NCBI GenBank assembly: GCA_977016875.1
Contig: CDRNST010000090.1
Location: forward strand, 992,001-1,056,000
Source of the DNA: Pavona decussata
Taxonomy: Eukaryota
DNA length: 64,000 nucleotides
Reading direction: 5' to 3'
Under the pieces are notes generated by a model that was given only the letters and a program-made list of their open reading frames with translations, searched no databases and was not told the DNA's origin. Shown here one piece after another: positions 29,001-35,000 of the stretch (the first letter of the stretch is position 1; every line of letters starts with the position of its first letter). The translations under genes and the position numbers were made by a program.

Positions 29001-32000
29001 AACACATTAGCTAGGCTTTCATCCACTGACATAAGTATGAGACATAAACCGTGTCCCCTCAGGAGTGGCATGCAGAGTACTGCTCAGTAGTTCCTGTTTG
29101 ATTTGTCACACTTTAGAATTTCATTTATACAATCACTAAAAGTAAGATCTACCGTACCTCGTAACGCATAACAAATAGTACCGCAGGAAAAAACCGTTTT
29201 CAACAGCTTTTGTTTGGTTTGTTACACTTTGGTATTTTTAATCCCAGACTCGAAAGTTTATGGGAACCGAGGTTGGCTGCGTCAACCGGAGAGACAAAGT
29301 TAACAATGCGCGGCTTGTTCGGCGTCGGTCATTTGTTTAAGAAGAAAGGAAAAATCGATTCGATTCTCCTCAATATGCGTCTTTTATATTTTCTATTACT
29401 TCTTTTAAGAAAGGTTACTTACATCATCGCCATCTTTAAGTGGGCATGAATAATAAAATTTCCCCACCCGCTGGGCTCTAGTTTAAGCGGAAAAAAGGAA
29501 CTTCGCCATACGCCCATCACACGAGCACTTGGCACTGCTGACGAAGTTGTGTGGCCTCATGCCTTAGTATAGAAATCAGCTGCAAAGTGTTTCCCCTGAA
29601 TGAAAACAAAAGCATCAGTGCTGTGAAGAGCTCCTCAAGGATTACCATGCTTACGCCCCCTCCTCCACCCCTCCCCTTTCAAATTAACACCTTCTGATCA
29701 ACGATCAAGAGGCTGAGAACCAAGGGGCATTTAATATTGGAAAGGATTGCTCACTCCGACAATTCAGCTTTATGTCACAGAATTAATGTCTGAGCGCTTT
29801 TTTGTTCAACGTCGGTTATTTGAATTTGTAACTAACAGTCGCTTTATATAGGACAATTAAGACTTAAGCCTTTACACAAAAAAACAGGATAAAATCTTAT
29901 GCCACACCCTTCACCTTATATAGCTCGTCAGGTTATCCTTTGTTTGAAAACAAGACATGGGCGGCTTAGTTCACCAAAATAGACAGTGAAAAATATATAT
30001 TTTTACCCTTTGTTTACGGAAGTCTCTTCATGAAGACATTTCCGATGAATTACAACCTTTTGAAAGCGGAAAATTAGTCGGAAGACCAGAGTGTTGTCAT
30101 TAGTAGATTTACGTTGTTTCAGCATCCGCTGTCGTAAAAAAGAAACAAATTCCGTTCGTTTTTGTGGATAAGCTTTAATCGGTAAGAACAAAGGTCATCG
30201 TAATGGAAACGCAATGCAGTTTGTTGTTGGTTATTTGAATCGTGAACGGCCACCGAGGTGTCATTAAAATTCATGCTTAAAAACGATTTGAGGCATAGCG
30301 CATATTGAAGAATATGGGCCACGGAAAGGTCACTGTCTTGCCCAGAATAGCGACCAATATAAACAAACTGTGCGTTTTCCAGCTGCAGGCCACCTTACAG
30401 CTTCTAATCACTCACGCGAGTTTGAGATTAAGAGAAACAGGAACTCAGGATTTTTACCAAAGTGAATAAATTAGTAAACGTTTCCATAAAATAAATTATG
30501 TTGAAAATTAGAAACTATGACAAACTCGAATCGGTTGATACCGCATCAGTTCAACCGACGAACCTCTCCCAAAAATGGCGATTAAAATGCATTATAGTTA
30601 CAGACGCATAACCGAGTCCCATGTCAAGGTTCGTTGCGGCTTGGTTTCAACAGAACCGTAATCACCTTTTCACTAACTCCCGATCCCTGTGGACAAATAA
30701 ATCCTTTGTTTATCTTGTTTGCGGCCCATGTTTAAACACTACACACAAATGCAGCATTGAAACTGCATTTTTTTATTTTCTATTTTTTTTTTTCCATTTA
30801 GGTCAGATCAAATGCTTGAGGATATTATTTTTAAGTTGGTACCAGGACTGCAAGAAAGTAAGCAATTATATTTGTTTCATTTAACTTTCAATTTCCATCT
30901 GTTGTTTTGATATTAAGTTGAGAAAGTGCCCATAAAGCATCATTTAGATGGTTAATTCTCTTAATAAAGTGCTTTACTTTCGCCTCAGTTGTCAATATAT
31001 AGTTGCCTTGGTTTCCATTTCAAGTTCCGGGTGTTCAGTTCACATCATTCCACGATGTTCAAAATATCTGACAAGGCGAAACTCACTTGTCTTGAACATT
31101 GTTTTTAAATTGAAGTAAATTCCCCTGACGAGAGTATTTTGCGTTGTTGTTTGGCACACGTTCGGCTTTTGTTCTTCCGCTTCCCTGGCAACACAAAGTT
31201 CAAGGAACTGTTAAGTTTCACTTTCCCTTTCAGCGCTAACTACCTTCCAAACGAAACCATATTGGTACAGGGCCAATCATAACAGCTATTATGCTCTTAA
31301 CAATAGCGTATTGATGACTACAAAAATAGCAACAACTTCCCTTGACCACCAGGTGGATTGCGTGACTCTCTTTGTTTTGTTGAGTCATAGCCAGCCCACT
31401 TAGTTTCTATGTTTACTGGTGACTACACTACTACCTTCGCTTTCCAAACTGATTCGCGGAAAAACCAGTCCAGTCAGTGCTTTAAAAGCCTTTGTTAAAT
31501 TCCCACTTTAGCTATTCTAGGAAAGAAACCTGTTTTTGTCGTTCTTTCGAGGAATTGAAATACACAGGTTAGAATCATCGCAATGCGCGTTTCTTGGTGA
31601 TATTACTCAGTAGCTTTCTATTATCGAAAGCGTCGTGCTCTGAAATCAAACAAGAGTTAATTATCCGTCTACCTTTTCAAGACTGCAATTTTATAGCACT
31701 TTTAAATTTGCATATGCTAACGAGCAAGCATGAACTTGCCTTTGTGGTTGATCAGTTGAAAACACCGGAAGACTTTACTCGGGGAAACCCCTCAAGAGAT
31801 GATTCGCTCCGATTGGCTAATATAAATAGGCTGAAAAAAACTTCCTTGTTTTCTCGAGATGTGATTCCATTTGAACCTTTATATTTATAACAAGCAGGAC
31901 TTCTCCGTTGTTGTCATTTTGAACTGGATCGCTAAGAAACGCTTTAAATCTAGATCTTAAATGGCGAAGCATCAAAGTACGGAATTCGTCATCGCGCAGA

Positions 32001-35000
32001 ACAAAACCACGCTTTTGAAAGAGAATGTTGAAAGAGTGCGATCTTTATTCTGCGTTGAAGTTTCACTGACACTTAATCCCAACAATGGAATACAGTGGAT
32101 TTGTCTCAAAGGATCTACCGAGGAGCTTCGAGAAACAGCAAAGACTTACATATCGTCGCTGTGCAGCACTAACCCAAAGCACTGTCTTGAACTACCGGCC
32201 GCCGTGTTTGAAACCTTGAAAAACGGCAATGGAGGCAAAGAGATAGAAAAGCTTACTGGCGCCGTGCTGTCGTTCAACGACTCGAAAGTTTTCCTGCAGG
32301 GTGACGATCTTGTTGTCACGATGGCAATCTCTGAAATTGAGCAAAGGATTGCCGCGTTCGAACAACAACATGGACTCGATACTAGTTCTACGAAATTTGC
32401 AGGAGGCGATGATGTTGAGCACGATGCTGAAAACGTTCCTGAAAATTCGACCGTGGACACAACGGACATTCCGCCTTCCATGCGCGAGTTTGCGCGCAAA
32501 CTTCATTACCAAGACAAAGACATCGACGCGGTCGTAAGAACATTTGGCACAGAAATCAACATAAATCAGCTTCTCCAAGAACTTGTTAAAAATTCCGCGT
32601 CATCTCTTCAGCTCAGCTCCGCTTCAGAAGACACTAATTTGCTTCCTCTTGCACGCGGAAGTTGTTCTCCATCTTTACCACTCAGAGAAAAGCGAATCTT
32701 AAATGCAAGAGGTGCCACGAGTACGATTGAGACCCGAAAGCAGGAGTTTTTCGATCAGCACGTAAAACCGTTCCAAGTGCCGGATCACTTGCGGCCCATT
32801 GTGATCGATGGCAGCAATGTGGCCATGAATCATGGAAACCAGAGAGTGTTTTCTTGTCGCGGGATAAAACTTTGCGTTGAGTATTTTATGAGGAGAGGAC
32901 ATGATGACATAACCGTGTTCGTACCCATGTGGAGAAGAGAAAAGCCTCGGCCCGAGAGTCCGATATCGGAACAGGAAATCCTTGATGAACTCTCCAGACA
33001 AAACGTTCTAAAGTTCACGCCTTCTCGATGGAGTGGCAATCGCCATATTATTTGCTACGACGACAAGTATATCGTCGATTTAGCCGATCAAAATGGCGGC
33101 ATCATCGTTTCCAATGACAATTTTCGAGATCTGCACAAAGAGAATCCACGATGGAAGGAAACCATTGAGCAGCGGTCACTGGGGTACACTTTTGTCGGAG
33201 ATCGTTTTATGCCCCCTGATGATCCTCTGGGACGTCGAGGACCCTCCTTGGACGACTTTCTTAGAAAAGGATCAGCCACGCACCCCAAAATTTGCCCGTA
33301 TTTGAAGAACTGTACCTTTGGTAACCGGTGCAAATATTACCACCCGGAAAGAGACACGCAACGACAACAGGAAAAAGCTACGGTGAGAACCTCCCCGGAG
33401 AACCCCGAGTCTTCTGTGGAGTCTAGCGCTCATACGTCAACTAGAACTCACCATGGGAACATTGTAGGAGACCCTAGGGTTTCCACGCAACCTCAACCTG
33501 TCCAATCGCGTTTGGAGCCTCGCTGCACTGTAAGTCCATCGACGCCAACTGTGAGGGATCCAAGGGTTTCTATTACGACTTTCCAGTCTCAGCCTCGCTG
33601 CACTGTAAGTCCATCGACGCCAACTGTGAGGGATCCGAGGGTTTGTATCACGACTTTTCAGTCTCAGGTCGAGAAAGGTGGACGGTCCCACGAAATTGGA
33701 GTCCGTGGGCGTGGACAAGCTACGGGCGCCCCATACGATCACACCCGCGTTCCTTACGGCGGTGAACATTACTACCCTGGGTATTATGAAGGAAATGTCT
33801 ACAACGATTACCTTCATCCAGTGGCTTCGGATTACACGGCCAGAAACCTGCCGTATCAAGAACCTCCGCGCATTTACCACCACGACATGGGCCAGTTTTG
33901 TCCCCCTCCACCCGCCCAATGGCCGCCGTATCCTCCACATCCTTACGCTACACCTGCGGGTATGGGATATCCCGCGGGTGCGGGACAATGCACATACGCT
34001 ACAGGCAGTTATTTCGAGCCCCCGCCAGCCCATTATCGTTATTGCCAGGGAGGCCAACGGGATCAAATAGACAGTAGCAACTCGCAAGATAATACCATCA
34101 GCAAAGAAAAATTTGACGAACTAGTTGATACGCTTAAGAACGTTTTTGAGGGGGATCAAGAGACAATAATTCATGTTCTGCACACGCACCCGAAAGAGTG
34201 TGCAGATGGTGATATCAATAAACTGGCGGAAATTTTGCTGGAGCCAGCTATGCGTCCAAACTGACTTTAATAGCTTGAAAAAAGCGTAATGCATTCAAAT
34301 ATTTTATAGTTAAATGTGAAATATACAAAAAATATGTAAATTATGTAAATAGGGTATGAAAGATATAAGTATATCGATTTTTAGTGTTCCTATGCGGCAT
34401 CGTGTTACGAAAAAAGCTATTCTTTGTAAATAGGATTCTGCGTCAAATGTAGATCAAACATCATCCAACCATATCGCTTTTACTTGTGTTTTGCTTTCTT
34501 CGCTTTCTTGTTTATTCGGCATGTCATTTGATCGTGTGATCGTGCCAAATATTCTTTATTAAAAGAGCTGTGAAATGAAACCTGTGTCTACCTGTATTCT
34601 GAATGCGTGGGATTACAAGGAAGATTTAAAACAAGTGTTGGCGTATAGCTACTGTAGTTTTGGTGGAAATATTTCCCTCTAAAACACTTCCCGCCAAAAT
34701 ATGCCAGATGGCATATTTTGGCGGGAAATGATTCCACGGGAAGCATCCACGCCTGAACTCCAGGAAGCCGGAAAAAATGGGAGCTGAAAATCAACGGTAC
34801 GTGCTGTCACGCGTTTGACGAAAGAACCGCAAAGCTTCACGTGAATTACCGCAAAGAGCTGTTATCCAACTGCCAATCTTGTCAGTATGCAAGTATGCTA
34901 TCACGCTAGTGTTGAGATAGGAATTTTGCTCATGTCAATGGTTTGCCATATCCTTACCCCAAAACACGTCAACTAAAGCGACGAGGAAGAAAAAAAAAAA

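What the first reader, a model, noticed from the sequence alone, without database searches (positions are those of the whole stretch)
31961..34264. Composite KH + PIN/NYN + CCCH architecture uniting N4BP1/KHNYN and Regnase features in one protein
Seen: residues ~5-133 ([27 protein letters not shown]...[23 protein letters not shown]...[19 protein letters not shown]) track the N4BP1/KHNYN extended di-KH region as I recall it. Residues ~174-212 ([23 protein letters not shown]...LLQELVK) match the Regnase UBA-like NTD. The PIN acidic residues are all intact, a CCCH finger follows (C445-H461), and a CUE/CUBAN-like helical domain ends the protein. Known: vertebrate N4BP1/KHNYN have KH but no CCCH (KHNYN works with the CCCH protein ZAP), whereas ZC3H12A-D have CCCH but no KH. 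Inference: this may be the ancestral all-in-one form of the family, or a self-contained antiviral RNase carrying both RNA-reading modules.
Basis: partly seen in the sequence, partly recalled or inferred. Interest (0 to 1): 0.8.

Follow-up and report, generated by a model that had tools for sequence, protein, structure and literature searches.

The report
Coral Regnase RNase keeping KH domains
This is an intact, transcribed, intronless stony-coral gene for a Regnase/ZC3H12-type RNA-cutting enzyme that also carries the N4BP1/KHNYN-type double KH domain; this domain set is the usual one in sponges, cnidarians and even fish ZC3H12B, so it is an old inherited form and not a new fusion.

Summary
Window 31961-34264 (+) is one 767-aa ORF with five modules:
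- an N4BP1/KHNYN-type di-KH domain (residues 7-141)
- a Regnase UBA-like domain (176-210)
- a NYN/PIN nuclease (277-432) with every catalytic Asp present
- a CCCH finger (C445-H461)
- a C-terminal N4BP1/Regnase-type helical domain (716-761)

RNA-like contigs cover the gene without any splice.

The same KH+UBA+NYN+CCCH layout occurs in sponges, hydrozoans, anthozoans, scyphozoans, a hemichordate, a sea urchin, amphioxus, lamprey, and fish and frog ZC3H12B. This coral genome has three such genes and no NYN gene of this family that lacks KH or CCCH. KH+NYN proteins without CCCH (N4BP1-like) were found only in bilaterians. "Ancestral all-in-one form" is therefore supported, but as the ordinary, database-annotated state.

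"Two RNA-reading modules" is not supported in general, because the KHNYN and N4BP1 KH domains are reported not to bind RNA. The coral clade does keep a GxxG loop in KH2, which leaves the question open for this protein.

The window copy is an intronless paralog nested in a Polycomb (PCGF) intron, as in Orbicella.

Verdict: a new member of a known kind, of modest interest. The scan noted this same stretch once before (s1-493685).

The parts
31961..34264 (+). Complete single-exon CDS, 767 aa plus stop: coral Regnase/ZC3H12-family endoribonuclease
   Evidence: Full-length orthologs at 45-96% identity and 99-100% coverage.
31979..32383 (+). N4BP1/KHNYN-type di-KH domain (residues 7-141; KH1 7-67, KH2 74-141). 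KH2 has a GNGG loop at residues 89-92.
   Evidence: Pfam PF23050; AF2 pLDDT about 90; Foldseek 6q3v/9hts at rmsd 1.7-1.8 A; hhalign against N4BP1-like N-termini gives prob 99.9%, E 5e-31; GxxG census.
32486..32590 (+). Regnase-type UBA-like N-terminal domain (UBA_6, residues 176-210), preceded by a disordered linker (residues 140-167)
   Evidence: Pfam PF18039 E 3e-7; genome scan hit at the same place; three helices at 172-218 in the model.
32789..33256 (+). NYN/PIN nuclease domain (residues 277-432) with D283, N286, D367, D368, D386 and D390
   Evidence: Pfam PF11977 E 1e-63; ZC3H12A/C structures E 1e-79; residues located.
33293..33343 (+). CCCH zinc finger, C-x5-C-x5-C-x3-H (C445, C451, C457, H461)
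   Evidence: Regex; aligned to the Regnase-1 and ZC3H12C zinc fingers in solved chains.
33356..34060 (+). Pro/Thr/Gly/Tyr-rich low-complexity region (residues 466-700). It holds a 75-bp tandem duplication at 33516-33667.
   Evidence: Composition; Tandem Repeats Finder, 2.0 copies at 94% match.
34106..34243 (+). C-terminal three-helix CUE/UBA-like domain (residues 716-761), shared by N4BP1 and the Regnase-1 CTD
   Evidence: Pfam PF23054 E 2e-5, below cut-off; profile against PDB: N4BP1 8t48 E 2.7e-5, Regnase-1 2n5l E 0.025.
31486..34518 (+). Approximate extent of the unspliced transcript. These are the outer limits of high-depth contigs in RNA-like runs; the true ends are not mapped.
   Evidence: tables 2 and 8. 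There are no joints inside.
30858..35772 (+). Host-gene intron (GT..AG) of a PCGF-type Polycomb RING gene. It contains the whole RNase gene on the same strand.
   Evidence: Joint 30857>35773 in contigs of 4 runs; splice-site letters; the Orbicella ortholog is nested in a RING+RAWUL gene.

Best explanation
The ORF is a functional coral member of the Regnase/ZC3H12 endoribonuclease family. It keeps the full ancestral metazoan module set: di-KH, UBA-like NTD, NYN/PIN, CCCH and a C-terminal CUE/UBA-like domain.

**Inferred mechanism, by homology.**
- The PIN domain uses the four-Asp, Mg2+/Mn2+-dependent site to cut target mRNAs endonucleolytically. In vertebrate Regnase-1 the targets are stem-loops in 3'UTRs.
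- The adjacent CCCH finger adds RNA affinity.
- The UBA-like NTD modulates the PIN domain.
- The di-KH acts mainly as a protein-docking platform. N4BP1 uses its KH pair to associate with EDC4 and P-bodies.
- The C-terminal helical domain binds ubiquitin or NEDD8, or regulates turnover and localisation.

**Evolution.** This copy is one of three paralogs in the genome. It has no introns at two positions where both sister paralogs have them, so it most likely arose by retroposition. It sits in a PCGF intron, an arrangement shared with Orbicella. N4BP1/KHNYN are bilaterian offshoots that lost the CCCH finger and the UBA_6 domain. Most bilaterian Regnases lost KH.

**Shown versus inferred.** Shown: domain content, intact catalytic and zinc ligands, transcription without splicing, and distribution across phyla. 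Inferred: RNase activity, substrates, KH partner, retroposition, and any immune role.
For: - Domains and residues.
- The NYN+ZnF region scores about 270 bits against ZC3H12A/C structures, against about 172 bits for the KHNYN PIN.
- Same architecture elsewhere: Nematostella, Dendronephthya, Rhopilema, Saccoglossus, Pristis and Alosa ZC3H12B; Oscarella, Sycon, Hydractinia, Strongylocentrotus, Branchiostoma and lamprey.
- Own genome: exactly three loci carry PF11977, and the same three carry PF23050 and PF18039. Both other paralogs have CCCH and a C-terminal helical tail.
- NYN tree: the cnidarian and bilaterian CCCH forms make one clan (86/81). The window protein sits in a coral clade with Orbicella (100/96*). 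N4BP1-like clans are separate and the sponges are central. The AU test does not reject a single CCCH clan (p = 0.35).
- Transcription: contigs cover about 31486-34518 with no joint inside, while the host intron is spliced out in all 4 runs.
- Introns: both paralogs have an intron after '...DGSNVAM' and after KH1 '...AK'. The window copy and the Orbicella ortholog are single-exon.
- KH function: PMC11997328, PMC13586276.
Against: - There is no enzymatic or binding test.
- The run type 'RNA' is the tool's guess. It is supported only by the spliced host joint and by coverage that stops at the gene's edges.
- The backbone of the NYN tree is unresolved and unrooted. 'Ancestral' therefore rests on taxon distribution plus parsimony, not on a rooted tree.
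- Absence of N4BP1-like genes outside Bilateria rests on one coral genome and on the named members among the best 150 of 219 KH hits. Ctenophores and placozoans were not identified.
- UBA_N4BP1_C is just below Pfam's cut-off.
- Retroposition is inferred from intron absence alone. No poly(A) remnant or target-site duplication was sought.
Confidence: 0.85

Rival explanations
1. The protein is a self-contained RNase in which the KH module also reads RNA. KH2, PIN and CCCH would all contact the substrate, possibly viral RNA.
For: - KH2 has the canonical type-I topology with a G-x-x-G loop (GNGG, residues 89-92) exactly at the alpha1-alpha2 junction. It is followed by an I-x-x-L...GA-V-L signature.
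- The loop is kept in 36 of 42 orthologs of the coral clade, and a GxxG is also present at that place in both sponge proteins.
- Vertebrate Regnase-1 is reported to cleave viral RNAs (PMC6223193).
Against: - The KHNYN ex-diKH shows no RNA binding, and its RNA-binding-type residues are dispensable (PMC11997328).
- N4BP1's KH pair lacks GXXG and mediates association with EDC4 (PMC13586276).
- KH1 in this protein has no GxxG loop: a single helix runs over residues 13-30.
- Sea-anemone, scyphozoan, hemichordate and vertebrate members lack the loop.
- The generic KH_1 model did not hit at E <= 1.
- There are no virus-related data for this gene.
Confidence: 0.18
2. The gene is the coral ortholog of N4BP1/KHNYN, not of Regnase. 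It would be an N4BP1 that secondarily gained a CCCH finger.
For: Some cnidarian and hemichordate relatives are named 'NEDD4-binding protein 1-like' by NCBI. The KH and C-terminal domains match the N4BP1 Pfam models best.
Against: - The NYN domain is much closer to ZC3H12A-C than to KHNYN (about 270 against 172 bits).
- UBA_6 and CCCH are Regnase features.
- In the NYN tree the protein lies inside the CCCH clan together with vertebrate ZC3H12A-C, apart from all N4BP1-like clans.
- The NYN domain starts at residue 277. In N4BP1-like proteins it starts at about residue 500-730.
Confidence: 0.05
3. It is a lineage-specific domain fusion, or a gene-model artefact, unique to this coral.
For: None was found. 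The idea arises only if one assumes that ZC3H12 proteins never carry KH.
Against: The ORF is one uninterrupted reading frame. The same layout appears in more than 40 coral orthologs, in six other phyla and in all three paralogs of this genome.
Confidence: 0.01
4. It is a dead retrocopy, transcribed only as part of the host PCGF intron.
For: It is intronless and nested on the same strand in a host intron. Low-depth contigs also cover intron sequence upstream, at 30829-31788.
Against: - The 767-codon frame is open, with every catalytic and zinc ligand kept.
- Orthologs are conserved down to 57% identity with all domains present.
- Contig depth over the gene is about 10-30 times that of the flanking intron, and it drops at both gene edges (table 2).
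Confidence: 0.03

Closest known systems
Vertebrate Regnase-1/ZC3H12A and ZC3H12C (PDB 3v33, 5h9v, 7ndj)
   Same: The UBA-like NTD, the NYN/PIN domain with the same Asp tetrad, the CCCH directly after the PIN, a Pro-rich region and a C-terminal helical domain. About 60% identity over PIN+ZnF.
   Different: In the fish, shark and other vertebrate ZC3H12A/C models seen here, no N-terminal KH domain is annotated. Their C-terminus matches Regnase_1_C better than UBA_N4BP1_C.
Non-mammalian vertebrate ZC3H12B long forms (Pristis, Alosa, Huso, Pelodytes, Ascaphus; lamprey)
   Same: The full layout: KH_N4BP1_1st, UBA_6, NYN, CCCH and the C-terminal domain.
   Different: They are longer (about 950-1020 aa), have no GxxG in KH2 and have Regnase_1_C as the better C-terminal match. 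The bird and mammal ZC3H12B models listed here (about 835 aa) show no KH.
N4BP1 / KHNYN / NYNRIN (PDB 6q3v, 9hts, 9cs9, 8t48, 2n5m)
   Same: The di-KH fold with the same orthogonal arrangement (rmsd 1.7-1.8 A; hhalign prob 99.9%), the NYN domain and the C-terminal CUE/UBA-like domain.
   Different: They have no CCCH, no UBA_6 was detected in them, and a long linker places the NYN domain at about residue 500-730. They have an extra helical extension after KH2 that does not match UBA_6. They were found only in bilaterians.
Cnidarian database models: Orbicella faveolata 'endoribonuclease ZC3H12A-like' (P0034), Nematostella vectensis 'endoribonuclease ZC3H12A' (P0051)
   Same: The same five modules. 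P0034 is the ortholog: 56% identity overall, 83% over the NYN domain, single-exon and nested in a RING+RAWUL gene.
   Different: Nematostella P0051 belongs to the clade of the multi-exon paralog on contig C172 and lacks the KH2 GxxG loop.

Membership tests
Regnase / ZC3H12 endoribonucleases | RNase_Zc3h12a-type NYN/PIN domain with the conserved Asp set (Regnase-1 D141, D225, D226, D244, D248; PMC5499597) | tested here: met
   PF11977 E 1e-63. D283, D367, D368, D386, D390 and N286 are present.
Regnase / ZC3H12 endoribonucleases | A single CCCH zinc finger immediately C-terminal to the PIN domain | tested here: met
   C445-x5-C-x5-C-x3-H461, aligned to the zinc fingers of 5h9v and 7ndj.
Regnase / ZC3H12 endoribonucleases | UBA-like N-terminal domain (UBA_6) | tested here: met
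   PF18039 E 3e-7, 30.8 bits, above the cut-off of 23.5. The model shows three helices.
Regnase / ZC3H12 endoribonucleases | Placement of the NYN domain with ZC3H12 proteins in a phylogeny | tested here: met
   It lies inside the CCCH clan (86/81) with vertebrate ZC3H12A-C. The tree is unrooted.
Regnase / ZC3H12 endoribonucleases | Mg2+/Mn2+-dependent endonucleolytic cleavage of stem-loop RNAs | not testable with these tools
   This needs recombinant protein and RNA substrates.
N4BP1 / KHNYN | N-terminal tandem type-I KH domains in the orthogonal N4BP1/KHNYN arrangement | tested here: met
   PF23050 E 4e-10; Foldseek 6q3v/9hts; hhalign E 5e-31.
N4BP1 / KHNYN | Helical-bundle extension that completes the ex-diKH domain | tested here: not met
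   After KH2 comes a disordered linker and then UBA_6. hhalign of UBA_6 against the N4BP1-like extension gives prob 0.6%.
N4BP1 / KHNYN | No zinc finger after the NYN domain, and a long linker between KH and NYN | tested here: not met
   CCCH is present and the NYN domain starts at residue 277. In 50-odd N4BP1-like representatives the NYN domain starts at about 500-730 with no CCCH.
N4BP1 / KHNYN | C-terminal CUE-like / CoCUN / CUBAN ubiquitin- or NEDD8-binding domain | tested here: inconclusive
   PF23054 scores 24.6 bits, below the cut-off of 27. The profile finds N4BP1 8t48 at E 2.7e-5 but also the Regnase-1 CTD at E 0.025. Binding was not tested.

The most novel reading that the evidence does not exclude
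In the coral-specific intronless paralog, and in sponges, KH2 keeps a canonical GxxG RNA-binding loop that N4BP1, KHNYN, vertebrate ZC3H12B and the other cnidarian paralogs have lost. If this loop works, the protein would be a Regnase-family enzyme in which a working KH domain helps to select RNA substrates. That would preserve the original job of a KH module that later became a pure protein-docking platform in bilaterians.
Probability: 0.18. Interest if true: 0.5.

Novelty: new member of a known kind. Interest (0 to 1): 0.3.

Why it matters
The gene itself is an ordinary member of a known family. What is useful is the comparative picture it prompted.

The N4BP1/KHNYN-type di-KH domain is not confined to KHNYN, N4BP1 and NYNRIN, as a recent structural paper states (PMC11997328). 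It is part of the ground plan of the whole Regnase/N4BP1 superfamily, from sponges to fish ZC3H12B.

This unifies two families that are usually treated separately:
- N4BP1/KHNYN can be read as bilaterian derivatives that lost the CCCH finger.
- Most bilaterian Regnases can be read as derivatives that lost KH.

Cnidarian proteins then become natural single-molecule models for how KH-mediated docking and CCCH-mediated RNA binding cooperate with the PIN nuclease. All of this can be read from existing Pfam annotations, so the advance is one of synthesis and not of discovery.

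Tried and rejected
1. Word-index search with the KH region of Nematostella P0051 (residues 1-150) found only the query itself. The region is too divergent for shared 5-mers, so this blank says nothing. It is why the profile search of all representatives was then used.
2. I tested whether the helical extension of the N4BP1/KHNYN ex-diKH is a degenerate UBA_6. 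Foldseek alignments to 6q3v and 9cs9_A span 209-219 columns, but at rmsd about 11 A. hhalign of the whole N-termini aligned only the 130 KH columns. hhalign of the two helical segments alone gave prob 0.6%. No support.
3. A single origin of the CCCH/no-CCCH split on the NYN tree: the free tree needs 3 changes, because the two sponge rows fall in an unresolved centre. The AU test does not reject one clan (p = 0.35). This neither proves nor refutes a single loss.
4. Literature searches for a described KH-bearing Regnase, or for cnidarian Regnase biology, found nothing relevant. The library lacks most subscription journals, so this is not proof that the point is unpublished.
5. KH2 of the paralog on contig C36 was not located by tblastn with the window protein. 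It is probably a short divergent exon, and I did not pursue it.
6. The exons of the two multi-exon paralogs were never joined. Only single-exon pieces were used, by reference, in searches and in the tree. No full-length models of those genes were made.
7. Complex prediction was not used. No partner protein was available as an unspliced reference.

Full report
**What is there.** Window 31961-34264 (+) is one uninterrupted 767-codon ORF. A TAA stop lies directly upstream of the ATG. Local GC is 0.49, against about 0.40 in the flanks.

Pfam finds five things:
- KH_N4BP1_1st at residues 8-69 (E 4e-10)
- UBA_6 at 176-210 (E 3e-7)
- RNase_Zc3h12a at 277-432 (E 1e-63)
- weak CCCH models at 444-463
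- UBA_N4BP1_C at 716-761 (E 2e-5, 24.6 bits, just under the cut-off of 27)

Against solved structures, the PIN+ZnF part matches Regnase-1 and ZC3H12C at E about 1e-79 and about 60% identity. It matches the KHNYN PIN at E 5e-50 and the N4BP1 KH crystal structure 6q3v at E 0.006 over residues 6-176. The catalytic residues D283, N286, D367, D368, D386 and D390 are all present, as is the finger C445-x5-C451-x5-C457-x3-H461.

**The N-terminus is an N4BP1/KHNYN-type di-KH.** An AlphaFold2 model of residues 1-220, built on a 38-sequence alignment, has pLDDT about 90 over residues 7-140. It shows a beta-alpha-beta-beta-alpha unit followed by a canonical beta-alpha-alpha-beta-beta-alpha unit. A disordered stretch (140-167) and a three-helix bundle (172-218) follow.

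Foldseek against the PDB ranks N4BP1 6q3v and KHNYN 9cs9/9hts first, at rmsd 1.7-1.8 A over 130-134 columns and TM about 0.65. Generic di-KH proteins (Krr1, Dim2, IMP) follow at TM 0.2-0.35. A profile-profile comparison with the N-termini of 23 N4BP1/KHNYN-like proteins gives probability 99.9% and E 5e-31 over 130 columns.

The helical extension of the vertebrate ex-diKH is not present. I tested whether UBA_6 is its counterpart and found no support.

**The C-terminus.** A profile of 23 cnidarian C-termini finds the N4BP1 C-terminal domain 8t48 (E 2.7e-5), then the Regnase-1 CTD 2n5l (E 0.025), then KHNYN CUBAN 2n5m (E 0.8). In several relatives the Pfam models Regnase_1_C and UBA_N4BP1_C hit the same residues. 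These C-terminal domains therefore look like one homologous module.

**The architecture is the standard one.** The word-index search returned more than 40 full-length coral orthologs at 45-96% identity. It also returned sea-anemone, octocoral and jellyfish relatives, Saccoglossus, and long ZC3H12B forms of sawfish, shad, sturgeon and frogs. All of these have PF23050+PF18039+PF11977 precomputed. My own scans confirmed KH, UBA_6, NYN, CCCH and a C-terminal domain in those proteins, for example Pristis ZC3H12B (KH E 9e-11) and Alosa ZC3H12B (KH E 2e-14).

I then searched a profile of the di-KH region against 1.84 billion representative proteins. It found only 219 hits at E <= 1e-3. Among the best 150, two layouts separate cleanly:
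- **Class A:** KH, then the NYN domain at about residue 200-340, followed by CCCH.
- **Class B:** KH, a long linker, then the NYN domain at about residue 500-730, with no CCCH.

Named class A members include the sponges Oscarella and Sycon, Hydractinia, Strongylocentrotus, Branchiostoma ('ZC3H12C') and lamprey ('ZC3H12B'). Named class B members are all bilaterian: Owenia, Tubulanus, Brachionus, Pecten, Saccostrea, Solemya, Haliotis, Patella, Argonauta, Potamilus, Patiria, Branchiostoma N4BP1-like, Styela, Phallusia and Protopterus KHNYN-like.

The 'would-refute' clause about novelty applies at the level of databases. In the paper library I could search, I found no article that describes this. 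[quoted passage not shown] Another traces 'N4BP1-like' proteins only to echinoderms and molluscs (PMC9888277).

**This genome.** The assembly (602 Mb) has exactly three loci that match the NYN model, and the same three match KH_N4BP1_1st and UBA_6. The other two lie on contigs C172 and C36. Both are multi-exon, and both encode a CCCH after the NYN domain and a helical C-terminus. So this coral has no CCCH-less or KH-less member of the family. I used the paralogs' exons only as separate pieces and never joined them.

**Phylogeny.** A maximum-likelihood tree of 89 NYN domains (IQ-TREE, LG+C20) gave the following:
- All cnidarian and bilaterian CCCH forms fall in one clan (86/81).
- The two sponge proteins sit in an unresolved centre.
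- The N4BP1-like proteins form three separate clans: lophotrochozoan (99/99*), vertebrate KHNYN/N4BP1/NYNRIN (100/96*), and a mixed annelid, nemertean, rotifer, tunicate and amphioxus group.
- The AU test does not reject one CCCH clan (p = 0.35).
- The window protein sits in a coral clade with Orbicella (100/96*).
- The C172 paralog groups with Nematostella 'ZC3H12A'.
- The C36 paralog groups with Saccoglossus, within a clade (95/91*) that also holds the scyphozoan and the other bilaterian Regnases.

The tree is unrooted. 'Ancestral' rests on the combination of class A in sponges plus cnidarians plus deuterostomes, and class B in bilaterians only.

**Expression and gene structure.** I laid contigs of four public runs, from at most three samples and four studies, on 30300-36200. 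They cover about 31486-34518 at 10-30 times the depth of the flanks, with no joint inside the ORF. The same runs carry a GT..AG joint from 30857 to 35773.

That joint shows the runs hold spliced RNA. It also shows that the RNase gene lies wholly inside an intron of a same-strand host gene. The host exon ends in a '...[14 protein letters not shown]' peptide typical of PCGF proteins (the motif is recalled from memory).

In Orbicella faveolata the ortholog is likewise a single 2184-bp exon inside a gene whose product carries RING and RAWUL domains. Both multi-exon paralogs share intron positions after KH1 '...AK' and after NYN '...DGSNVAM'. The window copy has neither intron. The simplest reading is an old retroposed copy that became a conserved gene. 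This part agrees with the earlier scan note s1-493685.

**Mechanism.** By homology, this is a Mg2+/Mn2+-dependent endoribonuclease of the Regnase type. The CCCH finger and the PIN surface would hold the RNA, and the UBA-like NTD would modulate the PIN domain.

The KHNYN KH pair does not bind RNA in vitro (PMC11997328). The N4BP1 pair lacks GXXG and is needed for association with EDC4 and P-bodies (PMC13586276). The default reading for the KH module is therefore protein docking to the decay machinery.

One caveat is specific to this protein. KH2 carries GNGG (residues 89-92) exactly at the alpha1-alpha2 junction. A GxxG is kept there in 36 of 42 orthologs of the coral clade and in both sponge proteins. 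It is absent from the anemone, jellyfish, hemichordate and vertebrate members. I keep RNA binding by KH2 as the novel case at about 0.18. Nothing examined here bears on antiviral function.

**Verdict.** The gene is a new member of a known kind. It is a coral Regnase paralog with the ancestral five-module layout, already annotated in relatives as 'endoribonuclease ZC3H12A-like'. Its interest is modest. It lies in the family-wide picture of KH as ground plan, N4BP1/KHNYN as CCCH-less bilaterian derivatives and repeated KH loss in Regnases, plus the conserved nested retrogene arrangement.

Noticed in passing
window 30858-35772 (+); L012 1-16176: The RNase gene lies on the same strand inside a GT..AG intron of a PCGF-type Polycomb RING/RAWUL gene. 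The intron is spliced out in contigs of 4 runs. The same nesting is present in Orbicella faveolata, so it predates the split of the two corals.
   Followed up: partly
window 33516-33667: A 75-bp tandem duplication (2.0 copies, 94% match) inside the ORF duplicates a 25-aa Pro/Thr/Ser-rich peptide in the disordered region. Short-read contigs of all four runs break at 33545 and 33619, around it.
   Followed up: partly
G000:C172:809942-813773 (L010) and G000:C36:1904139-1909588 (L011): Two multi-exon paralogs have the same KH+UBA_6+NYN+CCCH+C-terminal layout. They share intron positions after KH1 '...AK' and after NYN '...DGSNVAM'. KH2 of the C36 copy was not located.
   Followed up: partly
proteins P0118, P0120, P0076 against P0063, P0080, P0079, P0065: ZC3H12B models of a bird, a goat and Xenopus (about 835-855 aa) show no KH domain. 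Shark, teleost, sturgeon and other frog models (about 950-1020 aa) do. In Ascaphus one model has KH and an isoform lacks it. This may reflect alternative or unannotated 5' exons and not true loss.
   Followed up: no
one search hits P0133, P0145, P0154, P0181, P0186, P0192, P0195 and others: A set of 150-550-aa proteins matches only the KH2 half of the profile (positions 62-139) and has no NYN domain. They may be truncated gene models or a separate KH2-only family.
   Followed up: no
window 31344-34475: The RNA-like contigs differ from the window at dozens of single bases, and at small indels upstream of the ORF (31343-31345, 31758, 31834). The same differences recur across runs. This looks like strain or allele variation and not editing. 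No DNA run of the same individual was compared.
   Followed up: no
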